Assembly: GCF_964188315.1 (NCBI RefSeq)
Contig: NC_135669.1
Location: 16,244,001-16,308,000 of the forward strand
Origin: Podarcis muralis
Taxonomy: Eukaryota
Length of the DNA: 64,000 nt
Direction: 5' to 3'
In this document: one piece after another, positions 46,301-64,000 of the stretch
Layout of the letters: each line of letters opens with the position of its first letter
Position numbering within the stretch: position 1 is the first letter of the stretch
Translations under genes and position numbers: made by a program
The notes under the pieces: model-generated
Told to the model about the DNA's origin: nothing
The model's database searches: none
The model's input: the letters and a program-made list of their open reading frames with translations, nothing else

Positions 46301-47824
46301 AGCAGACTTGGATAAAACTGGAGGAAGCAGTGAGATCTTTCTCCAGAGCCAGATTGTTCCAGGACATCCCAATACACTTTGCTGTCTGCAGTGAAGGACA
46401 AGACAAATCCCACCCACCCCCTTGTATGTATAGGAGCATCTACAGGCTGGAGGGCAGCTCTATGCAGAGCTCCTCTGCTGGACCGGAGCACAACAGAGCT
46501 TCCTCGCATGATGGCTCAGCACTACCAGGCTGCCCAATCCACCAGGGGATGCAACATTTTACCCACCAGGCGCCAGCAACCTATGCTATGCCACTGGCTC
46601 TGTGCACGTTGGTCAATAAAATATGGGCCCTTCCTTGCCCCATGCTGCCTAATTGTAGGGCTGGCCCAGTTTCCATGGCTTGACTCTCTTGCTCTCCTGG
46701 GCAGCCTGTGATGACTGCATGGAGCTGAGCATCGGGCTGGTGGCCGGCATCGTCGTTGCTGACCTGCTCATTACCCTGGGGATCATGTTCCTGGTCTACT
46801 ACTGCAGCAGCAAGAAGCCTGCCACCAGCTTTGGTGGTGGGGCCACAGGGGGAGGCGCCCGCGGACGGACACGAGGTGAGTACTCTTGTGGTACACCAGG
46901 GCTCTCCACAGGGGTGCCTTCGGCTTCCTCTGTTGTCCCACAGAGAAAATTGGAAGTCATCTAAGCTGGGGTTGGATTGGTAAATGAATGCCGAGCATAT
47001 ATGGCTCCCATCTGGAGCTGGAGGCGGGGAGGGTTGCAGATTTGGTAGCAAGGGTGGGTTCTGGTACGCCCACAGCTTAAGAATTTGGGAGACCTGAAGG
47101 CTCCTCTGGGTGTTGCTGGGATGGGATCAGCTGGTTCAGGGCTTGCTTCAAGGGGTGAACTGGAGGAGAAACCAGCTGGCTGGCTGGCTAGACCCCAGCA
47201 GGGATCCTGATTGGCCCAGCCCAGAGGTCATAGCAGCAGCAGTTGCTCTGGGGTGGGGTGGGGTGGGGTGGGGGGACTTTACAGCCCCATCGTTCTGACA
47301 CAAAGTAGTTCAGCTAAAGCACCCAGGAGTTCCTTGTATGTGCGGACAGGGGCTGATGCCCCATGCTTAACCGCCCTGCAATAACCACCTCCAATTCTTG
47401 GCTGTGCTAACAAATACCCACTTTGCATTGTCTTCCAGGCCAAAAGGTGGACCGCCCCCCACCTGTCCCAAACCCAGACTATGAGGTAAGCACAGCAGAG
47501 GGTGGCTGCCAGGGGCTGGGAGGGAGAGTCTATGGAGGGCGGCCAAAGAACCTGGAACCTGATCACCATCGGCACTGGGAGGGCCAAGGGCTAGACTGGG
47601 CACACCTGGCAGGAAGGCCCCGCAGCCCTCTGGGGGCAGCTGCTTACTCACCTGAGGCAACCAGGCCCTGCTTGCTGGTGACCCCCATGGCCTCTCCAGG
47701 GAGAGACAGAAATGGCCCCATCACAGAAGGACCTTTGGTGAGTAACCTCTCCTCTTTATTCCAACAGCCCATCCGGAAAGGCCAGCGGGAGGTGTATGCT
47801 GGGCTGGAGCCCAGGGCCTTCTGA
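43351..47824 (+). CDS. CD3E: T-cell surface glycoprotein CD3 epsilon; located coding exons 43351-43399, 45698-45928, 46705-46875, 47439-47485, 47768-47824 (possible micro-exons between the first two not resolved)
   Basis: Signal exon MHLGVCLAALGLVLPL (49 nt), Ig exon (VTVTCP...DFTCQ...IYLQIK), CDDC motif, TM with Asp (GIVVADLLITLG), proline-rich RPPPVPNPDYE, ITAM YEPI...YAGL and C-terminal EPRAF*. All junctions are GT-AG. Confidence 0.96.
43700..43850 (+). mobile_element. tRNA-derived SINE with CR1-type tail
   Basis: B box ggttcgagccc followed by gattcctgcattgcagagggttgaactagatgacc. Confidence 0.6.
44584..44932 (-). mobile_element. Sauria SINE in CD3E intron
   Basis: Reverse-complement homologue of 34375-34718, starting with the (AAAGGT)n tail. 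Confidence 0.9.
47250..47275 (+). repeat. (GGGGT)n tract, G-quadruplex-capable, in CD3E intron
   Basis: Five consecutive G-runs with 1-nt loops. Confidence 0.8.
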
Positions 47825-49784: not shown

Positions 49785-52647
49785 TCACCGGTGGCGGGTC
49801 TTGGCCACTCCGATGTGGCTGTACTGCCCATTGTTGCGTTCTCCGAGAGGCTGGAGGGGAAGAGAGGCCTGCGGTTAGAACAGGGGTCTGTACTGACCAA
49901 GGAGGATTTGGGCAAGACTAGGGAAGAAAAGAAAGCTGCTCTGTTTCCTGTAGAAGGATAGGTGTAAGTGCTTCTTCCACTTAAGAATGGAGGCTTAAGA
50001 ATGGCCTTTGACTCCAAGCCAGAGAGGAAAGGGCTGGGAGCACCAACACACCTCATATTTGGAAACAGCTGCAGCTTCTGTTTCAAGAGTTAAGGACTCT
50101 CCCTGCTTCCTTCTACAAGCCCCACATCACAGCAAACTTCAGTTGTCCAGAAAGAACTGCAGGTGTTCTCATCATCCATTTATTCTTCCTTTAATATATT
50201 TTTTTTCCAAATGAAGTTGCTTTGGGGATTTTCTGCCACCACAGTCTCTTCATTTTACCCCATTGGGTGGCTAATCTCTGGCCACGAGGGCTAGAAACTA
50301 GCTTTTTAAAATAACACACAGACAGAATCATGATTCCCAGGAGAATATATTGCCTCTGCAAAGCAGCACCCTAGGCTGAGGCAGAAGAAGCTTTGCAGAA
50401 GTCAAGGAATTCTTGGATGCAAAAGGCCCCTCATTTCACAGCTTGGGAGGAGCTGTCCAGGAAAACACCACCATGGAGGAGAGGAAGGGACTGACCACAG
50501 GCACACACTCACCTGGTAGAGCTGCTCATTGGCTAATAGGGTCTGCTTGTCAGAAGCTGCAAAGTCAAAACAGGAAATTTCAGGATGACTCCAAATGGGT
50601 GATTAACACAATTAAAAATTAAATATACCAGGTATGGGAGCGTGGATGCCAACATAGACATTGCTCCCTTTTTCAAGGCTGTTTCCCCATCTCCCAGGAA
50701 CTGCCTGTGCCCCAATGCTCACCCTGAGATCGTCGGCCCGGCTCCCCCGCAGCAATGCAGTACACGCCAACAGCCAGGAAAAACGTAGCCACGATGCTGG
50801 CCAGCAGAATCCCCATGATCGCGGCAACGTCCAGACGAATACAATTCTGGCACACTGTGTCAAGAGGGAGAGAACTCAACATGCATCCTATGCTCACAAG
50901 CACACCTGAGTTTTGTCCACATGTGGCTTGATTTGAATAGAGTGTGGCTCTGAGCACATGGAAACTGTACTAATTTTGATGTTTGCCACCCTGGGCTCCT
51001 TTGGGGGGAACGGGCAGGATAGAAATTTAACAAACGACAAGAATAATCAATACAGTGGTACATCGGGTTGCAGATGCTCCAGGTTACAGACACTTCAGGT
51101 TACAGACTCTGCTAACCCAGAAATAGTACCTCGGGTTAAGAACTTTGCTTCAGGATGAGAACAGAAATCGTGCAGCAGCGGCGCAGCGGGAGGCCCCATT
51201 AGCTAAAGTGGTGCTTCAGGTTAAGAACAGTTTCAGGTTAAGAACAGACCTCCAGAACAAATTAAGTTCTTAACTTGAGGTACCACTGTAAATGGATGGT
51301 CCCTCGCCACTGAGTGACTAGAAACACCCAGCGCTTTTGTGGGGGGGGGATGCAGGGCTACGCATACCCCTAAACATTTTGTGAATCTTTGTACTTTTGT
51401 CCATTTACTGTATTTATTTCCCCCGATTTGAACTATAAAATGGTGATTTTCTGGAGTCAAAATGAGAGTAACCCTAAACATATTTTTTTTGTTTGTTTTG
51501 AAAAAAAGCACTGGAAACAGCCATTTGCCACCTGGGACTAGATGAAAAGCACTTCTGCTTGTAGGGTGGGTTTTCTAGCTAAACACAACTCCTAACATCC
51601 AAACAGCCCATCAACCCAACAAAACAAACCCCGGAGCCCAGGGACGGTTGCTGCACCACAACCAGCAGAGAGACCTGCGCAATATGCTTAGCAGGATACT
51701 TACCACTAACAAAAGAACAAGCCAGCTGAGAGGCTTAAAAATGGAACAGAAATAAATTTTGTCACTCAAAATTCTCATCTGAAAAGTATTCTAAGTTTGA
51801 TGTCATTGTGTGACATCCAATGATATTTGATATTTGATTTCAACTTCTTTAAAAAATGCAATCACAGTCAGATCTGATGTGAGCAAAGGCGTTTAGTATT
51901 TGACAGCTCCCATGCAGAAGCTGCCAATCTTTGATGGTGTCTGAGATCTTCCATGCAACAGCAGGTAGTAAAACATCTGCTTTTGAAATAAGATTGTTCA
52001 TTTAATTTAACCAATTACGGTAATTAGGAAACAAGCCCCAGAAAAAGATAGTACTCTCTACCATATGCGGTGATCTTGTAAGAGAGTAAAAGCTTTATGG
52101 GAAATGATTTATAACGAATTGAAGAAAATGTTTAAGATAACTTTTAACAAAAAAACAGAAGCTTTTCTTTTAGGGATAGTAGATAGTGAGATACCAAAAC
52201 ACCCCCCCCCCCCAAATTGTTTATGTATGCCACGACTGCAGCTAGAATGGTTTTTGCCCAGAGATGGAAAGAAGCTGTAGTACCAACCCTGGAAAAGTGG
52301 CTAATTAAATTAATGGATTATTTTGAACTGTCAAGGTTAACGGGTGTAATAAGAAACCAAGAAGAAGAATAAATTATTAAAGATTGGGGGAAATTTGTGG
52401 AAAATTTGTAAAACTTATGTATGCAAATAGCTCATTAGTAGGATTAATGTAAAACAAGTGGTTAAGCATATTATTATGGGAAACTAAAGAATAACTTTAG
52501 ATGGAGTAATGTGGAAAATCCAGCATGAAAATTAAAATCAAAAGGAAAGCACAAAAGGGAGGAAGTCAAATATATGTGCATTAGAAATGTGTGTACCATA
52601 ATTTGTGTTTTTGCAATTTGTATGATTGCAAAAAAAAATTTGAAAAA

Positions 52648-52691
<44 letters not shown>

Positions 52692-55600
52692 GGTTTTGGT
52701 GTCCTCGGGTGTCTTCCCGTGTAAAAGTTGGGGTGTCTAGGCGACGTTTCGACGAGGTCTCACTCGTCATCTTCAGGCTGGTGCTTTCGGCTTCTTGTTA
52801 CTGGAACAGAGCAGGATCTCAGTGTTTGAGTTCCTATAAATACTGTTGAGGGGTGTGGTGAGGAAGTTCCCAGGCTAGTGTGCCTTTTCTTCTTTTGTTC
52901 CTTAGTTGCTTGAGGGATATCTTGAGTGATTTCTTGAGTGATATCCTGAGTACCACTTAGGTGGGTCATTAGGTGTGGATTAGTTGCTAAAGCCTTAGTG
53001 TCTTGACCTCTTGAACTTTGTGAAGAGTTTTTCTGAGAAGATGGCTGTAGTTGTGCTCTGGCTTGGCTTCGTGTATAGGGGCGAGCTGTGGTTTTGTGGC
53101 CTGTGCCAGCCAGATCTGTGTAGGGATTGCAGGGGGGTGCAGCATCCGGAGGTGCCATCATGGTTTGGCTACTGGATGGTGTCTGTAATTTATCTGTGGA
53201 GAGGGTCTGGGTTGGGGTCTGGTGTGGTTGATTGGTGATGGCGTTCTGTGTGCCTCTGGATCTGGTGTCAGTTTTTGTGGGGAGGGCTAATTTCCAGATG
53301 TCTGGCAAGCGGGATGTGTCGTCACGCTTGTTCATGTTGTGAGGGTGTTTCTCTATCTCGATGGCTTCCATGATTATTCTCTTGTGGTGATGTTCCATGT
53401 TAGAGAGCAATTTGGAATCTGCAAAATTAATTTCGTGTCCTGTTTCTTTCATGTGTTGGAAAAGAGAGGAAGTTTTTTCTTCTTTTTTGACGGCATTCTT
53501 GTGTTCTGCGATACGTGCATTTATTCGTCTGTTTGTTTGTCCAATGTACGTGGCTGGGCAGACTTTGCAGGGTATTTCATAGACCCCTTGGTTTTCCAAC
53601 TGGATTTTATCCTTGGGGTTTCTGAGGATATTGGCTATCTTTTGGTTGGCGCAAAAGGCTGTTTTGATATTGTGTTTATGGAGGATTTTGCTAATTTTAT
53701 CTGTGGTGCCCTTGATATAAGGAAGGAGGGCCATGCCATTGTTTTCTTCTGTGTCTTGGTTTTTGGGGGGTGTTTCTTTTTGGATTAGCTTCGTAACCCT
53801 GTTTTGCTGGTATCCATTGGCAATTAACACATTTGAGAGATTCTGTAACTCAGTTGTCAAGTGGTCTTTGTCAGCCAGGCGTTTGGTTCTGGAGATGAGA
53901 GTCTTGGCTACGGAGTTTATTTGTGCAGGGTGGTGGTGTGATTGTGCATGTAAGTAGCGGTTGGTGTGTGTTTTTTTCCGGTAGATAGTGTGTCCTAGGG
54001 AGCCATCAGGTTTTTTGTAGATTAGGACGTCAAGGAAGGGAAGTTGGTTGTTGGCTTCTATTTCCATAGTGAATTGTATTTTGGGGTGTAGGCTGTTGAG
54101 ATGTGTGAGGAAGCTGTCCAGTTTTTCCTTCCCGTGTGGCCAAATTACAAAGGTGTCGTCAACATATCTGAGCCAAAGTTTGGGTTTGTGTTCTGACTTG
54201 TCTAAAGCATTGGTTTCAAAGTGTTCCATGTACAGGTTTGCGATGACCGGTGAGAGGGGTGATCCCATAGGTGCTCCTTCTATCTGTTTGTATCTTTGTC
54301 CATTGTGGATGAAGTACGTGTTGGTTAGGCAGTGGTTGGTCAGGTCCAAGATGTATTCGGGGGGATTGTATTTGTTTTGAATGGCTGTCAAGGCTTCATT
54401 AATGGGCCTAATAATCATGGAAGCCATCGAGATAGAGAAACACCCTCACAACATGAACAAGCGTGACGACACATCCCGCTTGCCAGACATCTGGAAATTA
54501 GCCCTCCCCACAAAAACTGACACCAGATCCAGAGGCACACAGAACGCCATCACCAATCAACCACACCAGACCCAAACCCAGACCCTCTCCACAGATAAAT
54601 TACAGACACCATCCAGTAGCCAAACCATGATGGCACCTCCGGATGCTGCACCCCCCTGCAATCCCTACACAGATCTGGCTGGCACAGGCCACAAAACCAC
54701 AGCTCGCCCCTATACACGAAGCCAAGCCAGAGCACAACTACAGCCATCTTCTCAGAAAAACTCTTCACAAAGTTCAAGAGGTCAAGACACTAAGGCTTTA
54801 GCAACTAATCCACACCTAATGACCCACCTAAGTGGTACTCAGGATATCACTCAAGAAATCACTCAAGATATCCCTCAAGCAACTAAGGAACAAAAGAAGA
54901 AAAGGCACACTAGCCTGGGAACTTCCTCACCACACCCCTCAACAGTATTTATAGGAACTCAAACACTGAGATCCTGCTCTGTTCCAGTAACAAGAAGCCG
55001 AAAGCACCAGCCTGAAGATGACGAGTGAGACCTCGTCGAAACGTCGCCTAGACACCCCAACTTTTACACGGGAAGACACCCGAGGACACCAAAACCTGCA
55101 TACCTATACCCGTGAAAATCTACGAAAGCAAATATATATATATATATATACCGTATATATGGAAACAAAGAAAGCAGGCTCCACCAGGGCCGTTGACAAC
55201 ATCACAACTGCCAGGCTAAGCACCTTCACACTGGACAGGGTTGTCGTAGTCCCCACCAAGTGGCCACAAATCTGGGTGTGTCCCCTTCCCACCACCCTCT
55301 CAGTTGTGTGACTCTCTGGACTAGCACTGCTTTCCTGTCCCTTCACATGGGGGAGGAAGGGCTCACGCACTTCGGACGAACACCTGAAGACGTGCGCTAC
55401 TGCACTCGAAGACACCTCTCGGGTCATCCAGGATGTCACCCAAAGACAGGCTAGAGTTTCCGTGGTTTAATGCATTCCCATCTTTCCTCCAGCTTATTGG
55501 GAGGTTTTTATCCTCCGCTTCGCAGTAGAGGACAATGTTATTCTTCTGCTGCTTCACCGTGATGGAATCCTCAGCAATACCTATGAGAAAGGAATGACAA

Positions 55601-56545: not shown

Positions 56546-57158
56546 CTACTACAACCCAGAGTCGTACAATGAAGTGGAAGAGTAGGACATTCATCAGAGA
56601 GGGAGAGGGAGAGAGACGCAGATGAATATATTTCTTGTGGAATTCTCTGGTACAAGATGTGGTGATGACAGCTATTATTAACGTAGATTGGTGATTGATC
56701 CTGATGGCCAAATGGAACCTGTCTCCTGTGGTTGGTGGTTCTGCTTTATCCTTTGAACAAGGCACTGACATTTCATAGGGTCCAACAATAAGAGTCCAGC
56801 CAGTAAGACCTGATGCCTTTCAGGGTGGGACACAGAAGGTAAATGTGGCGAGCATCTTCTTTTCAAGCATTTGATACATACAGGTTTTGGGAAGCGTTTT
56901 AGAGCACAGTTACAGGCAAAAATAATATGGGAAAGGATCTGTCAATGAACATTATAAGGTGAATTGGTTAGTTGCCTCTCTTTGTCTTCCCACTCAAGGA
57001 CCCAACTTCTTCACTTTTCTGTCTTTGTTCCCCCGCCTCCACAAATGTCAGATCCTTTCCTGAGGCTGGACTCAAGGGCCTTTGAGTGAGGTCCTACCTT
57101 TGGAGAAGAGCAATCCAAAGAGGAAGGCTGCACACAAGAGATGCTGGCTGCGTCCCAT
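49785..57158 (-). CDS. CD3D: CD3 gamma/delta chain (single non-mammalian CD3D/G homologue); exons 57098-57158, 55371-55580, 50723-50854, 50513-50556, 49785-49850 (513 nt, 170 aa)
   Basis: Translation: MGRSQHLLCAAFLFGLLFSK|GIAEDS...LYCEAE...WRKDG...LGDILDDPRGVFEC...LQVFVR|MCQNCIRLD...VYCIA...|ASDKQTLLANEQLYQ|PLGERNNGQYSHIG...*. CxxC, the DxxxLL di-leucine motif and the ITAM are present. The five-exon layout is delta-like. Confidence 0.93.
51051..51290. mobile_element. Tc1/mariner-type MITE, family A
   Basis: TA TSD, the same TIRs and the same body. Confidence 0.88.
52050..52648 (+). mobile_element. L1 3' fragment (its tail is the Penelope insertion site)
   Basis: Degenerate ORF2 end (TTAARMVFAQRWKEAVVPTLEKWL) homologous to 23140-23445, with an A-rich tail. 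Confidence 0.75.
52743..52776 (-). ncRNA. Second copy of the minimal hammerhead motif (same sense as the CD3 gamma/delta pre-mRNA)
   Basis: Exact reverse complement of 55012-55045. Confidence 0.65.
55012..55045 (+). ncRNA. Minimal type I hammerhead ribozyme motif in the Penelope pseudo-LTR
   Basis: CUGAAGA-U, helix II GACGAG/CUCGUC, GAAA, palindromic ACGU and a GUC cleavage triplet. Helix I is weak. Confidence 0.65.
55795..55893 (-). mobile_element. tRNA(Ile)-derived SINE
   Basis: Minus strand taactcagttggttagagtatggtgctgataacgccaaggttgcaggttcgatcccc, then a degenerate SINE tail. Confidence 0.65.
56482..56542. repeat. Compound (CT)n-(CA)n microsatellite
   Basis: Direct reading. Confidence 0.95.
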
Positions 57159-59003
57159 GACCCTTCTTCAGAGTGTGTGTTGATAACCCGCTTATTCTTT
57201 CCCTTGAAATGAAATTGCTCACTTTGCAAAAAGACACCCACAAAGAAGTGCCCTTTGCTCAGTGCTGTGCTGAGCTGGATATGAAAGTAGAAGAAAACAT
57301 CTCTGTAGTCAGCCAAGAACAGGAAACCTGTGGGTGGGAGGCCTCTCTGTCCCCACCGTGCAGGGAAATGAACGAGTGAATAGATGTTAAGAAAGAGTAC
57401 AATTTCCGAAAAGAATCACTGGGGCGGGGGGGGGGGTGCTCTTGTGTTTGAGTCCAGCTTGAGAGTTTCTCACAGGCAGGTAGGATTGTATGTGAATAGG
57501 ATGCTGGACTTGAAAGGTCATTGATCTAATCCAGCAGCCCCTTCTCATGTTCTTAAATGGAAGGAAATAGCCTGCAGAACATGGAAATTTAACTGATTCC
57601 TCACCACACACTATTCCCCCCTCCCCCACTACCAGATCTGCCAACTTCATGAACTGTTGTCTAGAGAAATGGTGTACTCGCTGGGGGTGGCATGCAGCCA
57701 TCACACCATCAGAGGGTGGGTATTTTGGTGGGGCCAATGGTGAGGTGAATCCTGGAAACCCAAAACAGCCGCAGGCAGAAAATGACAATTGTGGGCTGGG
57801 GCAAGGTGGGATATAACTTCCACTGTGGCATTACAAAGCACTGTCTAGTATATGAGAAAGATGGATTGCATCGCAGGGTTGTTGTATAACTCCCCCTCTC
57901 CTCTCCATTGGATAGGGTGGTTTTCTCCATGTCCTGTGTGTGGGCTTCCCAAGAAGGCATCTGGTTGATGACTGGAAAACAGCAGGCTGAATAAGATGGA
58001 TCCCCATTGGGTCTGGTCCAGCGACACAGCTCTACTTAAATTTGGCCACAGCTCTCATACTGCAATATGGAGATAATACTTGTGGATTTGATTTTCATTT
58101 CTGAAATATTTTAAAGAACCATTTAAAACGGCATTGATTTTTCACAAGAATATCTGAGTATGAAACAGAATGAACTCGGCTGCAGTGCTAGAACAGATAT
58201 ACAGATATAGAAAGAGTGTGTATGAACTTCCACCACCACTTCTATATGTGTGGGCAGAGGGTAAGGATGGATATGCTGCTGTCCAAACAGAGCTACACAA
58301 AAGCAAAGCAAAACTGGGTCTCTAGCCATTGTTTCATATGAACAGCTGTCACTTTTACCTTGGTGGACAAAGTGGGAAAGCAAGGCTTCAAATACAGCCA
58401 GGAAGTCCCGCCTTCAGAAACGTGAACGGTCAGTCTGATCCTATTACAGAGCTACGATTTCAAAGTGTTTACAGTTTAAAGAACCTTCAGAGCAGTTATT
58501 GAGCTTCTGTAGCATCGGTTGCAAGCAAAAAGCAACGAAGAGGCCCGTGGCTCCTCGTGTTCCAACAAATATCCTTATGCTATAATCTTTCGAGGGCAAG
58601 AGGCCACTTCCTCGGATGCATCACCCTCAGTTGCAATTGCAGGGATATGAAACACACATCATCATATATATATAATTTTTTATTAGTTTTTTTAACATAT
58701 CATTTTCAACAGTAATTAAACATACTTTTACATCTTATTCAAATTTTTCACTTCCATCAATCCTGTCTGAAACACATCATCATGGCTGTAAGCGGGGACG
58801 GGGGACGACTTGTGTCCAGGGAAGCTGCGGGGCAGGACCTCCTGCCATTCTTAGGAGAGCTATTGGGAGTCAGAGGGGGCGATTTCACCCTCCCAGCTGT
58901 CCCTAGTCAGAGCAAACTGCCCTGCAAGCCTTTCGCGAGATGTGATCCTTCGGCCGCAGCCCCCTCTCTACAACTTGCGGCGTGAGGACGGCAGAATGTA
59001 CAG

Positions 59004-59985: not shown

Positions 59986-62900
59986 ATGACCGACCAGGAG
60001 AACAACAACAGTATCTCCAGTAACCCCTTCGCCGCCCTCTTCGGCTCCGTCGCCGACGCCAAGCACTTCGCCGAGATCCAGAAGCAGCAGCAACTGACGC
60101 CGCCCGTTGGTGAGAGGTGGCCTCGCTTTTGGTGGGGGGGGGGTTTGACGCCCCTGGCCTAGGAAACATTGGGTCAGATCGAAGGTTGAATCCCGCGTGG
60201 AGGTATTGCTGAAAGCACTTGGGTGATCTTATCTGTACCCCCTCCCTTCCCTGTCCTTATTTTAAACGACAGACCATTTTACCGCCCCAAAAGCTGGGCA
60301 TCAGTAACCATAGATTGCAAAAACTAATATGGATTTTAAGGAATTGGTGCAAAGAAGAATTGGATTAAAATGGATAAAAACTAGTAGGTGCTGAAATCCT
60401 CAGTTTTTCACTGGCTTACCTGCAGGCTTCCAAATGGAAGGGTTTTTCCTCTGCTTCAGGTTGTGCAAATCTTTGGAAGAGCAGAGAGAGTTCGTTGTGA
60501 CGGGATAGTCACTGAGGCAGCCTTTCTGTGTCTTGACTGGCCCGGTTAGGCAAACAAATTGTGTTTGGGTGATAAGGTTCAAGTGGTGCCCATGTGGGGC
60601 TGGCAACCAGTCTCCATGCATTTTCTAGAGGCGACAACAACATGTTTGTGATTTGTGGTAAGCTGACTTTGTGGCTGGTAGCTATATTTGCCTGATGCCT
60701 GACATGTTATCAAGTAGCCAAATCTGAGGCAAAGGCCATGCTGGTCCCTCCTTCTTCTTGACACAGAGCCCTCCAGGGCAAAAGGCCAGGGTGCATGGTT
60801 GGTGCCTGGTGGGGCCAAGTTAGGCTGCTTCTTAACTAGTTCTACTTCTCCAGTGGAGGAAACCTCGGCCAGCCAAGATGATTCTGACAACAGCGTGTCT
60901 GAAAGCCTGGATGATTGTGACTACTCCGTGGCTGAGATCAGCCGCTCATTCCGTTCCCAGCAGGAGCTCTGTGAGCAGCTCAACATCAACCACATGATCC
61001 AGAGAATCTTCCTGATCACGCTTGACAACAGTGAGTATGGGGAGTTAGTTCCTGGGATCCAGACTAGGAGGAACTCTCAGTTATACTGGGATTTTTGCAG
61101 CTTCCTGAGAGTAGGGCTGCAGTATTCTATGGTGGCTGTAGACTCAACACAGATAATCTTCCACTTGTAGTTACTTTTGCTGTACTATGTGCTGCAGAAT
61201 CTCCTAAAGAACTTGGCTGTGTGTGGTTTCTCTTACACTATGCTTGTCACTGTATAAATGCTTTCCTGACACATCACGTGTGGTGGCAGGGAGTAGTGTT
61301 TCCTGTAATAGTGCTGCTCTATTCTGCTGCACAATTATTTGTGTGGGGCAAGAAAACCCCTCAAGCTTGGATCCCTATGTGCATCAGTTGCCTTAAAAGT
61401 CTCTCAAGAGTTCCAAAATGCTGGAATGGCTGTGTCCCTTCAGGCATGTGCTGTGCCACTGGCACTCAATAAAACAAAGCTTAAATCTCTCCCTTCCTCT
61501 TCCCCAGTGAACTGATAAAAATAAATTCTGCCTTTAGGAAAAATCAAGTTAACGTCTTTCAAACTAGGGAGGGGGGTTATTGGGTTGTTGTTTTTATTTT
61601 GATTATATATTTTGTGGTTTTATATGTTGATTTTGTTCTATGAACCGCCATGAGACTTCTGGGTACAGGATGGTATATAAATTAAATAAATAAATAGAAA
61701 GGTGGGGTGGGAGGATGATGTATGGGTTGGGGGCTTGGGGTTGTAGGGACACAGATTCATGCTTGTGGTGTTACTGATGTTGCTGGTTTGATGATTCCCA
61801 ACCTGCAGGTGACCCCAATCTCAAAAGTGGCAATGGGATTCCTGCACGCTGTGTGTACTTGGAGGAAATGGCAACAGACTTGGAGGATCAGGATTGGCTT
61901 GACATGGAGAATGTGGAGCAGGTATCTGTGCACATGCAAATGCAGTTGATTTTTCTGCCTGGCTGAGGGCTTGGCAGAGCATCCATGAGCCTTGGTGAAG
62001 GATGCAGGCTTTGCCCTTCAGGACACACTGTTCTCTGTGCTGATGTTCTTGAAGGACCCTTCAGCTGGATCAGTCTTGTGAATGGAAGACATTTGCCTTC
62101 TCTCCATTTGTAGTGCTCACTTTCTAGAGCAGGGCTGGGTAACCTATGGACCTGCAAATATTGTTCAATTTTAACTTGAATAATCCTCAACCACTAGCCA
62201 TACTGGTTTGGGGCTGATGGGAGTTATAGTCCAACAACATCTGGAGGGGCACAAGTTAGCCACCCCTGTTCTAGAGCCACCAACGTTGCATTTTGGACTT
62301 TTTGTTTAATCAAGCAGACTTGTCTGATGTGGGTGCCTGAATCCTATCACCCATTTGCTTGCAGCTCATGATAATGTGGGTGAAGGATCTGGCCTTAGCC
62401 ACAGGAGTTGTCTTGGATGACCTTCAGGTCTTACTGTGTGTTTTTGATACATAGCTGGGCACTTGCTCTATGTGGCTGGTGGGTGGGCAGGGTTGTGTAC
62501 TGACCATTTATGTCCGGCTTGGCATGTCTCTCCAGGCTCTCTTTACCCGGCTACTCCTCCCTGAACCAGGGAATCACCTGATTCACATGACCTCGGCTGG
62601 CATACAGAATCTATCAGCTGACAGAGATGCAGGGGAGAAGCACATATTTCGCTACCTCTTTGCCAGCTTCCAGAGGGCAAAGGAGGAGGTGGGTCAACGC
62701 CCCACATCCCTGTCAGCAAGTCTGACTGCCTGAGCGGAGCAGCCCAGCAGACCAGAGACAAAGTTCTCTCCTCTGTTCTCCTAGATTACCAAAGTGCCAG
62801 AGAACCTGTTGCCCTTTGCCATGCGCTGCCGAAACCTTTCTGTGTCCAACACTCGCACGGTCCTCCTCACCCCGGAGATCTATATCAACCAAAATGTCTA

Positions 62901-63815
62901 CGAGCAGCTAGTGGACTTGATGCTGGAGTCCCTTACAGGAGCCCGTAAGTTACAGAGGCAGAGCTGGGCACCCTAGAAGAAGTTAATGGGCTACAACTGC
63001 AGGAGGTCCCTCAAAGATACCTTTGATACCCCACCTTTTTATTATAGTTGTAAATGTGTTGGGGTGCCTGTATCTTTCTATGAGAATGCATAAAGGATTG
63101 GTGTTCACTTCTCTCCTACTCTCTTACTGTAGGCTTTGAAGATGTAACTGAGTTCCTGGAGGAAGTCATAGAAGGCCTCACTATGGATGAAGAAGTGAAG
63201 ACCTTTGAGGAAGTAATGGTGCCTGTCTTTGATATCCTCTTGGGACGGATCCGAGAGCTGCACCTTTGCCAGATCCTGCTATACTCCTACCTGGACATGC
63301 TCCTCTACTTCACTAGGCAGAAAGATATAGCGAAAGTGAGCATTTGGCTAGCCTATCTTCAGGGTACCAGGGAGCAGCAAAGCAATCAGCCATGGCCATC
63401 TTCAGCCTACCTCCTGGGCAGAGGGGTAGCTGCTTGTTCTCTTCACTGTGAAGAGAGCATGGCCTTCCTGATTCTGTGCTGTGGTTACAACATGCATCAG
63501 TGATAGGCTGGCCAATATGGCAGAACCATCATTCCATAAAAGGGTGTCCTTCATTCCACTACTTATATCGGGGCTTTACCTGTAGTGGCTGACCAGCAGT
63601 ACCTTCTGTTTCTGTTTGCTCAGGTTTTTGTAGAGTACATCCAGCCAAAGGACCCAGCCAATGGGCAGCTCTACCAGAAGACTTTGCTGGGAGCTATCTT
63701 GAGCATCTCATGCTTGCTGAAGACCCCAGGTGTGGTAGAGAACCACGATTACTTCTTGAATCCCTCTCGGTCCAGCCCTCAGGAGATCAAGGTGCAGGAA
63801 TCCAACATCCACCAG
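59986..63815 (+). CDS. UBE4A: Ubiquitin conjugation factor E4 A, 5' part; coding exons 59986-60109, 60854-61030, 61809-61921, 62536-62688, 62785-62944, 63133-63335, 63624-63815; gene continues beyond the window
   Basis: Translation: [19 protein letters not shown]...[27 protein letters not shown]...[11 protein letters not shown]|[22 protein letters not shown]...|ALFTRLLL...|[18 protein letters not shown]...|...[24 protein letters not shown]. All junctions are GT-AG and in frame. Confidence 0.97.
62130..62268. mobile_element. hAT (MER5-like) MITE in UBE4A intron
   Basis: TIRs cagggctgggtaac / gttagccacccctg and perfect TSD TTCTAGAG. Confidence 0.75.
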
Positions 63816-64000
63816 GTGGGTGGATGTGCACATTTCATACCAGTGTAGCTTAACCAGGCAGAGTAGAGGGGACAGCAGCGGAAAATGACAGCTTCTGTCT
63901 CTTAAATTTATCTCTCTAGTGTGGTTTGGTGGGTTCTTGGTTGTTCCTTAAGTCACAGATTGTCAACATCAAAGTATAGTGAAAACCTCCGCAGGAAATT

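What the first reader, a model, noticed from the sequence alone, without database searches (positions are those of the whole stretch)
50796..50798. CD3 gamma/delta lacks the transmembrane acidic residue (Asp/Glu to Ser)
Seen: the TM exon reads CQNCIRLDVAAIMGILLA-S-IVATFFLAVGVYCIA, and the codon at 50798-50796 (minus) is AGC. Anchored on CQNC with no gaps, this is the position of the Asp in CD3 delta and bird CD3 gamma/delta (GIVVA-D-VVAT) and the Glu in CD3 gamma. No other acidic residue lies in the helix. Established: TCR-CD3 assembly relies on one TCR basic residue pairing with two acidic TM residues, one from CD3 epsilon and one from CD3 gamma or delta. The CD3E here keeps its Asp. ITAM, di-leucine, CxxC and all splice sites are intact, so the gene does not look dead. 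GAC to AGC needs two substitutions, which makes a simple base-call error less likely. Inference: this lineage may assemble its TCR by altered intramembrane rules, possibly linked to the reported squamate TCR reorganisation (loss of gamma/delta loci).
Basis: partly seen in the sequence, partly recalled or inferred. Interest (0 to 1): 0.82.

Follow-up and report, generated by a model that had tools for sequence, protein, structure and literature searches.

The report
Lizard CD3 chain lacks membrane acid
The wall lizard's only detectable CD3 gamma/delta gene, like that of every non-gecko lizard and snake checked, is expressed with a serine where other vertebrates keep an acidic residue that textbooks call indispensable for building the T-cell receptor, so these animals are a natural test of that rule.

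Summary

- **Codon and gene:** Codon 50798-50796 (minus) is AGC, Ser110 of a five-exon CD3 gamma/delta gene. It aligns without gaps to Asp111 of human CD3 delta and to the Glu of CD3 gamma.
- **Expression:** RNA contigs from three studies carry the transmembrane (TM) exon unchanged and spliced at GT..AG.
- **Spread:** All 15 named non-gecko squamates sampled (11 families) have Ser, always as AGC or AGT. Five named geckos keep Asp or Glu; tuatara, turtles and birds keep Asp.
- **Uniqueness:** Ser110 is the only column fixed in non-gecko squamates that differs from both geckos and outgroups. It did not change over about 5.9 substitutions per site of tree length.
- **No compensation seen:** CD3 epsilon keeps its Asp. 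A skink's TCR alpha, beta and epsilon chains keep their Lys/Arg. No second CD3 gamma/delta copy was found.
- **Timing:** Geckos also lack gamma-delta TCRs, so the change came after that loss, not with it.
- **Best reading:** each TCR lysine pairs with one carboxylate plus a Ser/Thr hydroxyl network.

I found no paper describing this. A 2026 review calls both acids "absolutely required". No assembly test has been done.

The parts
57098..57158 (-). CD3 gamma/delta exon 1 (coding part): signal peptide MGRSQHLLCAAFLFGLLFSK + first base of Gly21
   Evidence: tblastn with P0067 is 100% identical. The joined CDS equals P0067, with donor GT after 57098.
55371..55580 (-). Exon 2: CD3 gamma/delta Ig-like ectodomain
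   Evidence: Pfam Ig_4 (CD3 delta type), 56.8 bits. RNA contigs join 55371 to 50854 with GT..AG ends.
50723..50854 (-). Exon 3: CxxC stalk, transmembrane helix and start of the cytoplasmic tail
   Evidence: Sequence read. Gapless phmmer alignment to human CD3 delta 93-134. Zero differences in three RNA contigs and in a DNA contig of a second organism label whose flanking introns do differ.
50796..50798 (-). Codon AGC = Ser110, at the position of Asp111 of human CD3 delta and the TM Glu of CD3 gamma
   Evidence: The homologous codon is AGC or AGT in Rhineura, Pogona, Varanus, Candoia and Lerista. It is GAC in Gekko, GAA in Sphaerodactylus and GAT in Terrapene.
50513..50556 (-). Exon 4: ASDKQTLLANEQLYQ (DxxxLL di-leucine motif and first ITAM tyrosine)
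   Evidence: RNA joints 50556|50723 and 49850|50513.
49785..49850 (-). Exon 5 (coding part): PLGERNNGQYSHIGVAKTRHR + TGA (second half of the ITAM)
   Evidence: Pfam ITAM, 27.7 bits.
46707..46829 (+). CD3 epsilon stalk and TM coding stretch, CDDCMELSIGLVAGIVVADLLITLGIMFLVYYCS. Asp codon GAC at 46761-46763. Exon ends were not mapped.
   Evidence: The Asp is kept in every squamate and turtle locus where the CD3E stretch was picked out.
60790..63821 (+). UBE4A exons (synteny anchor, head to head with CD3 gamma/delta)
   Evidence: tblastx against the Rhineura locus L004 gives three exons at 83-92% identity. The L004 gene there carries Ufd2P_core and U-box.

Best explanation
**Shown here.**
- The wall lizard has one CD3 gamma/delta gene between UBE4A and CD3E.
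- It is transcribed and correctly spliced.
- It encodes Ser110 (AGC) at the membrane-buried position where CD3 delta, gamma and gamma/delta of other jawed vertebrates carry Asp or Glu.
- The same Ser, always coded AGY, is present in every non-gecko squamate sampled. It is absent from geckos, tuatara, turtles and birds.
- It is the only residue of the protein that is fixed in that clade and different from both geckos and outgroups.

**Inferred.**
- A single replacement happened on the stem of non-gecko squamates by two transitions: GAY to AAY or GGY, then to AGY. This came after the loss of the gamma/delta TCR.
- The Ser has since been held by purifying selection.

**Proposed mechanism (inferred, untested).**
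- The lizard TCR-CD3 complex still assembles through the same intramembrane site. Each TCR lysine is neutralised by the single carboxylate of CD3 epsilon.
- CD3 gamma/delta would contribute only hydroxyls: Ser110, plus the conserved Thr one turn below (SxxxT in place of DxxxT).
- Each contact would then be a charge-neutral Lys-Asp pair inside a hydrogen-bond network, rather than the canonical one-basic, two-acidic triad.
- Ectodomain and connecting-peptide contacts of alpha-beta-type receptors would supply the rest of the binding energy.
- Loss of gamma-delta TCRs may have made this change affordable, because their ectodomains are flexible and poorly resolved in the cryo-EM structure.
For: **The residue is real and expressed.**
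- Codon, exon and alignment.
- The CDS is identical to RefSeq P0067.
- The exon is present in 20 runs.
- Three RNA contigs from three studies are spliced at GT..AG with 0 differences in the exon.

**Spread across species.**
- Ser in 15 named non-gecko squamates of 11 families. Asp or Glu in 5 named geckos. Asp in tuatara, turtles and birds.
- Of 248 family members with a recognisable stalk and TM, 137 have D, 85 E, 23 S and 3 N.
- Ser codons are all AGY.

**Tree and selection.**
- With the site masked, squamates get 100/99 support and geckos 100/99. One origin is not ruled out.
- Branch lengths inside the Ser group sum to about 5.9 substitutions per site, with no change at Ser110 (my sum of the lengths).
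- Ser110 is the only column fixed in the clade that differs from both geckos and outgroups.
- A hydroxyl one turn below is retained: Thr at i+4, or Ser at i+3 in Phrynocephalus. This argues that the polar site is still in use.

**Partners are unchanged.**
- The CD3 epsilon TM keeps A-D-LL-x-T-x-G in all loci where it was found.
- Tiliqua rugosa TRAC keeps Arg and Lys; TRBC and TREC keep Lys (PMC11754216, Suppl. Fig. 4). Its congener T. scincoides has the Ser.

**Single gene.** There is one CD3 gamma/delta TM exon in the window, and one in each of 7 other squamate loci with 10-kb flanks.

**Gamma-delta TCR.** Its ectodomains are flexible and unresolved in PDB 9CI8 (PMC13107469).
Against: - **In-vitro precedent.** In the only direct experiment I found, a DAP12 dimer with one Asp and one Ser assembled with KIR only at "very low levels" (PMC1440944).
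- **Current review.** It states that both acidic residues of each pair are "absolutely required" (PMC13107469). A working Asp/Ser pair goes against this mutagenesis.
- **No assembly, surface-expression or structural data** exist for any squamate complex.
- **Timing argues against a tight link to gamma-delta loss.** Geckos lack gamma-delta TCRs but keep the acid. Sharks have a Ser-type paralogue beside an Asp-type one.
- **Gaps.** Whole genomes could not be searched for a divergent second copy. TCR constant regions of Podarcis itself were not examined.
Confidence: 0.6

Rival explanations
1. Tolerated loss. In sauropsid alpha-beta-type receptors, the ectodomain and connecting-peptide contacts carry assembly. 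The CD3 gamma/delta TM polar contact has become dispensable, and Ser is merely a harmless residue that drifted in after gamma-delta TCR loss relaxed the constraint.
For: - Geckos, which also lack gamma-delta TCRs, vary at this site: D, E, and N in one unnamed gecko-like transcript.
- Asn occurs sporadically elsewhere, in Sorex CD3D and in Neogobius.
- The D/S pair works poorly in vitro (PMC1440944). That would fit a contact that no longer matters.
Against: - Ser is invariant across about 5.9 substitutions per site of tree length.
- The neighbouring Thr or Ser one turn below is also retained.
- A dispensable buried site would be expected to drift to Ala, Gly, Val or Leu in some of the 15 species.
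Confidence: 0.2
2. Compensation elsewhere. The missing charge is supplied or made unnecessary by a co-evolved change in a partner. Candidates are juxtamembrane residues of CD3 epsilon or gamma/delta, a TCR connecting peptide, zeta, or a lipid.
For: - CD3 epsilon position 8 after the first stalk Cys is acidic in geckos and turtle (EMD, ELE). It is Gly or Ser in the five non-gecko squamates read.
- The stalk Glu of CD3 gamma/delta (CQNCIE) is H, R or Q in most non-gecko squamates.
Against: - These changes remove acids rather than add them, and they are not fixed: Varanus and Elgaria keep the stalk Glu.
- No new acidic or basic residue appears inside the CD3 epsilon or gamma/delta helices.
- The skink TCR TM basic residues are canonical.
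Confidence: 0.1
3. Hidden canonical paralogue. As in sharks, a second Asp-type CD3 gamma/delta gene exists elsewhere in the genome and does the canonical job, while the Ser-type chain is specialised.
For: - Sharks have both a Ser-type chain (Pristiophorus, Heterodontus, Carcharodon, Cetorhinus) and a 40%-identical Asp-type chain.
- A review reports two CD3 copies in catshark (PMC6795676).
- Squamate genomes could not be searched whole here.
Against: - An exhaustive phmmer search of 1.84 billion representatives with the TM exon found no Asp-type chain from any non-gecko squamate. Two word-seeded searches of 90%-identity clusters also found none, although many of these genomes are RefSeq-annotated.
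- The same searches did pick up 40-50% identical bird, turtle and mammal chains.
- The CD3 cluster holds a single copy in the window and in 7 other squamate loci.
Confidence: 0.07
4. Artefact or dead gene: a base-call or assembly error, or a pseudogene.
For: None found.
Against: - The exon is identical in 20 runs, including RNA from three studies.
- The reading frame is intact and all five exons match the RefSeq protein; the exon 2-5 joints are confirmed in RNA contigs.
- The same residue occurs in 15 species.
Confidence: 0.01

Closest known systems
Human and mouse TCR-CD3 complex (CD3 delta Asp111 and the CD3 gamma TM Glu; PDB 6JXR, 7PHR, 8ES7)
   Same: - Ig ectodomain, CxxC stalk, single TM and one ITAM.
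- The TM exon aligns without gaps at about 50-57% identity.
- A Thr one turn below the key site; the partner CD3 epsilon keeps its Asp.
   Different: - Ser replaces the carboxylate, so each Lys contact would have one acid instead of two.
- One gamma/delta gene serves both CD3 dimers.
Chicken, turtle and tuatara CD3 gamma/delta (single-gene sauropsid form)
   Same: - Orthologous gene with the same five-exon plan.
- In the turtle locus L008 it lies between UBE4A and CD3E, as here. Chicken and tuatara loci were not fetched.
- 47-50% identity to the Podarcis protein.
   Different: These all keep Asp (GAT or GAC) at the site.
Gecko CD3 gamma/delta
   Same: Same squamate orthologue (clade support 100/99). 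Geckos also lack TRG/TRD and carry TRE (PMC11754216).
   Different: Geckos keep Asp or Glu. One unnamed gecko-like transcript has Asn. The site is variable in geckos, not fixed.
DAP12 DxxxT and DAP10 DxxxS signalling dimers
   Same: The same organising principle: a receptor Lys or Arg contacts a pair of TM residues supported by hydroxyls one turn below (PMC13107469).
   Different: Both chains there carry Asp. An engineered Asp/Ser DAP12 dimer assembled with KIR only at very low levels (PMC1440944). Lizards use the Asp/Ser combination naturally.
Shark Ser-type CD3 gamma/delta paralogue
   Same: Ser at the same TM position (ILIA-S-V/I) and a comparable tail.
   Different: It coexists with an Asp-type chain. 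It is of independent origin. I do not know whether the shark Ser has been described in print.

Membership tests
CD3 gamma/delta subunit of the TCR-CD3 complex | CD3-type Ig-like ectodomain | tested here: met
   Pfam PF16680 Ig_4 (CD3 delta), 56.8 bits against a cut-off of 30.1.
CD3 gamma/delta subunit of the TCR-CD3 complex | Membrane-proximal CxxC stalk motif | tested here: met
   CQNC at the start of exon 3.
CD3 gamma/delta subunit of the TCR-CD3 complex | Acidic residue (Asp or Glu) in the TM helix, 18 residues after the first stalk Cys | tested here: not met
   Ser110 (AGC) lies at that position, and there is no other D or E in the helix.
CD3 gamma/delta subunit of the TCR-CD3 complex | Hydroxyl residue one turn below the key site (the T of DxxxT) | tested here: met
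   S-IVA-T in Podarcis. Retained in all non-gecko squamates as Thr at i+4, or as Ser at i+3.
CD3 gamma/delta subunit of the TCR-CD3 complex | One cytoplasmic ITAM and a DxxxLL di-leucine motif | tested here: met
   YQPL-x7-YSHI (Pfam ITAM, 27.7 bits) and SDKQTLL.
CD3 gamma/delta subunit of the TCR-CD3 complex | Position in the conserved CD3 cluster (UBE4A - CD3 gamma/delta - CD3E) | tested here: met
   In the window: CD3E on + at about 45.7-46.8 kb, CD3 gamma/delta on - at 49.8-57.2 kb, and UBE4A on + from 60.8 kb. The order is the same in L001-L008.
CD3 gamma/delta subunit of the TCR-CD3 complex | Expression as a spliced mRNA | tested here: met
   Three RNA-run contigs join exons 2-5. The tissue and cell type of those runs are not known to me.
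CD3 gamma/delta subunit of the TCR-CD3 complex | Physical pairing with CD3 epsilon and assembly with TCR chains | not testable with these tools
   This needs co-translation and immunoprecipitation, or a structure.

The most novel reading that the evidence does not exclude
Non-gecko lizards and snakes, the large majority of the >10,000 squamate species, would naturally build functional TCR-CD3 complexes in which each TCR lysine meets one carboxylate and a Ser/Thr hydroxyl network. The "one basic, two acidic" rule would then not be universal, and the second carboxylate of the canonical triad would act as a hydrogen-bond partner rather than as a charge. The change would have become possible only after the gamma-delta TCR was lost.
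Probability: 0.45. Interest if true: 0.85.

Novelty: new variant of a known kind. Interest (0 to 1): 0.76.

Why it matters
**The rule at stake.** The pairing of one TM basic residue with two acidic residues is the accepted organising principle of TCR-CD3 and of many activating immune receptors. [quoted passage not shown]

**What this finding offers.** Here a major vertebrate radiation has replaced one of the two acids by Ser in its only detectable CD3 gamma/delta chain. It has kept that Ser in every one of the 11 families sampled.

**What becomes testable.**
- Whether the second carboxylate is charged or protonated. The review says the electronic distribution in these contacts is not well understood.
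- How much of the assembly energy is intramembrane and how much comes from the ectodomains.
- Whether loss of gamma-delta TCRs reshaped the signalling module.

**Practical side.** It adds a natural template for engineering TM assembly in synthetic receptors. It also adds a second squamate-specific peculiarity of the T-cell system, beside gamma-delta loss and the TRE locus.

Tried and rejected
**Hypotheses tested and dropped.**
- **Base-call or assembly error:** rejected by 20 runs and three RNA contigs.
- **Species-specific oddity:** rejected, because 15 named species share the Ser.
- **Compensating change inside the CD3 epsilon helix:** none in the window or in 6 other loci. My pattern did not pick up the Candoia CD3E exon, and I did not follow that up.
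- **Altered TCR basic residues:** not seen in Tiliqua rugosa TRAC, TRBC or TREC. Podarcis TCR constants were not available to me.
- **Second CD3 gamma/delta copy:** none in the 64-kb window, none within 10 kb of the gene in 7 other squamates, and none in the protein searches.
- **Strict coincidence with gamma-delta TCR loss:** rejected by the gecko data.

**Searches that found nothing or failed.**
- Seven full-text searches found no paper describing the squamate Ser.
- The 2022 J Immunol paper on squamate gamma-delta loss (PMC9012676) is not held.
- Locus look-ups failed for Eublepharis, Chelonia, Sceloporus and Sphenodon, so their codons are unknown.

**Limits.**
- The gene tree does not resolve the backbone of non-gecko squamates. 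A single origin therefore rests on the accepted species tree, not on this tree.
- I did not attempt structure prediction, because only single chains can be folded here.
Full report
**1. The observation**

On the minus strand the window reads GCC AGC ATC GTG, with AGC at 50798-50796. The exon runs from 50854 to 50723, bounded by an AG acceptor and a GT donor. It encodes (M)CQNCIRLDVAAIMGILLASIVATFFLAVGVYCIAAGEPGRRSQ.

A phmmer search of all PDB chains with this exon gives gapless alignments:
- Human CD3 delta residues 93-134 (6jxr_d, E 8e-9). The Ser lies opposite Asp111.
- Human CD3 gamma. The Ser lies opposite the Glu of LFAEIVS.

The helix holds no other acidic residue.

**2. The gene**

tblastn with a lizard protein found in the searches locates five exons. 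Joining 57158-57098, 55580-55371, 50854-50723, 50556-50513 and 49850-49785 gives a 170-aa product. It is identical to the Podarcis muralis RefSeq protein P0067.

The product has all the expected features except the TM acid:
- the CD3 delta-type Ig domain and an ITAM (Pfam);
- the CQNC stalk;
- the SDKQTLL di-leucine motif;
- canonical splice sites.

CD3E lies tail to tail on the plus strand and keeps its TM Asp (GAC, 46761-46763). UBE4A exons lie head to head from 60.8 kb. No second CD3 gamma/delta-like TM exon exists in the 64-kb window.

**3. Reads**

- Twenty RNA or DNA runs, from several samples and studies and three organism labels, hold all sampled words of the TM exon.
- In three RNA runs from three studies, a single contig joins exons 5, 4, 3 and 2 at GT..AG boundaries. 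Each carries the TM exon with no difference.
- A DNA run of a second organism label has the exon unchanged while both flanking introns differ.

The Ser codon is therefore real, and it is in mature mRNA.

**4. How widely the Ser is shared**

I ran an exhaustive phmmer search with the exon and two cluster searches.

| Group | Species | Residue at the site |
|---|---|---|
| Non-gecko squamates (11 families) | Podarcis muralis, Zootoca vivipara, Rhineura floridana, Anolis sagrei, A. carolinensis, Sceloporus undulatus, Pogona vitticeps, Phrynocephalus forsythii, Elgaria multicarinata, Varanus komodoensis, Candoia aspera, Erythrolamprus reginae, Crotalus tigris, Lerista edwardsae, Tiliqua scincoides | Ser |
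| Geckos | Gekko kuhli, G. japonicus, Heteronotia binoei | Asp |
| Geckos | Sphaerodactylus townsendi, Eublepharis macularius | Glu |
| Unnamed gecko-like transcript | P0053 | Asn |
| Outgroups | tuatara, turtles, birds, salamander, lungfish | Asp |

The residues are read. Of 248 family members with a recognisable stalk and TM, 137 have D, 85 E, 23 S and 3 N.

At the DNA level, the Ser is AGC or AGT in all six lineages read. Gekko has GAC, Sphaerodactylus GAA and Terrapene GAT. This fits one origin through an Asn or Gly intermediate.

**5. Tree and constraint**

I built a maximum-likelihood tree with the trait residue masked.
- Squamates are recovered at 100/99 and geckos at 100/99.
- The backbone of the other squamates is unresolved, so one origin is not ruled out by the gene tree.
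- One origin follows from the accepted species tree, in which geckos branch first among the lineages sampled.

Branch lengths inside the Ser group sum to about 5.9 substitutions per site, yet the Ser never changes.

I scanned every alignment column in 15 non-gecko squamates, 6 geckos and 15 outgroups. Position 110 is the only one fixed in the non-gecko squamates that differs from both other groups. The hydroxyl one turn below is retained throughout, as Thr at i+4 or as Ser at i+3 in Phrynocephalus. The site therefore looks used, not abandoned.

**6. Partners**

- The CD3 epsilon TM reads A-D-LL-x-T-x-G in geckos, a turtle and the non-gecko squamates alike.
- In the skink Tiliqua rugosa, TRAC keeps its Arg and Lys, and TRBC and TREC keep their Lys (PMC11754216, Supplementary Figure 4). 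Its congener T. scincoides has the Ser.

I found no compensating charge.

The only branch-associated changes I noticed remove acids from the extracellular juxtamembrane stretch. CD3 epsilon position 8 goes from D or E to G or S. The CQNCIE Glu of CD3 gamma/delta goes to H, R or Q in most, but not all, lineages.

**7. Relation to loss of the gamma-delta TCR**

PMC11754216 lists the leopard gecko among squamates that lack TRG and TRD and carry the TRB-derived TRE locus. Gamma-delta loss and TRE gain therefore predate the gecko split, while the Asp-to-Ser change is later.

The link can only be permissive:
- Gamma-delta TCR ectodomains are flexible and unresolved in the cryo-EM structure (PMC13107469). 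That fits a greater reliance on the membrane contacts.
- Among the tetrapods sampled, squamates are the only group in which this site varies widely: D, E and N in geckos, S in the rest. The one other tetrapod exception seen is an Asn in Sorex CD3D.

Against a strict link, sharks carry a Ser-type CD3 gamma/delta paralogue next to an Asp-type one. That sharks keep gamma-delta TCRs is my own knowledge, not checked here.

**8. What is known**

- With DAP12 and KIR, replacing one of the two Asp by Ser or Ala reduced assembly "to very low levels" (PMC1440944).
[quoted passage not shown] - Seven full-text searches found no paper that mentions the squamate Ser.
- Subscription journals are mostly outside the library, so prior mention cannot be excluded.

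**9. Verdict**

The best reading is a selectively maintained single-carboxylate variant of the TCR-CD3 intramembrane contact in all non-gecko squamates. It arose once, after gamma-delta TCR loss.

Three weaker rivals remain:
- tolerated loss of a dispensable contact;
- compensation outside the helices;
- a hidden canonical paralogue.

Only reconstitution experiments and whole-genome searches can settle these.

Noticed in passing
window 52763-54445 (minus), inside intron 2 of CD3 gamma/delta: A 561-aa stop-free stretch with reverse transcriptase and GIY-YIG nuclease domains (Pfam), i.e. a Penelope-like retroelement fragment. Word depths run to tens of thousands in a DNA run and hundreds in RNA runs.
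   Followed up: partly
window 50900-51500: A very high-copy repeat in intron 2, just upstream of the TM exon in the sense of the gene. Summed word depth reaches about 3 million in a DNA run and 10^5 in RNA runs. I did not classify it; it is probably a SINE.
   Followed up: no
proteins P0047, P0254, P0255, P0256 versus P0257 (sharks): Sharks (Pristiophorus, Heterodontus, Carcharodon, Cetorhinus) have a CD3 gamma/delta-like chain with Ser at the TM acidic position. Pristiophorus also has a 40%-identical Asp-type chain that is annotated as an isoform. This is an independent case of a Ser-type CD3 chain, here as one of two forms.
   Followed up: partly
proteins P0006 (Sorex araneus CD3D), P0055 (Neogobius melanostomus), P0053 (unnamed gecko-like transcript): Asn replaces the TM Asp in these three sequences. 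I did not check whether they are errors, polymorphisms or real lineage states.
   Followed up: no
loci L001-L008 and window 46707-46829 (CD3E stalk): The eighth residue after the first stalk Cys of CD3 epsilon is acidic in geckos and the turtle (EMD, ELE). It is Gly or Ser in the five non-gecko squamates read. This is a juxtamembrane change that roughly tracks the Ser clade.
   Followed up: partly
window 55522, 55539, 55546 (Ig exon of CD3 gamma/delta): RNA contigs differ from the window at these three exon positions. A UniRef entry for P. muralis (P0001) differs by two residues in the same exon (D to G, N to D). I take these to be allelic variation of the ectodomain, in contrast to the invariant TM exon.
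   Followed up: partly
window 57280-57960 versus L004 8580-9890: The stretch upstream of CD3 gamma/delta exon 1 shows extended similarity to the same intergenic stretch of the worm lizard Rhineura. It is probably a conserved promoter or enhancer shared with, or lying next to, UBE4A.
   Followed up: no
proteins P0121 and P0126 (Mauremys mutica), same contig: Two different CD3 gamma/delta-like proteins are annotated on one turtle contig, so some turtles may have two copies. Not examined.
   Followed up: no
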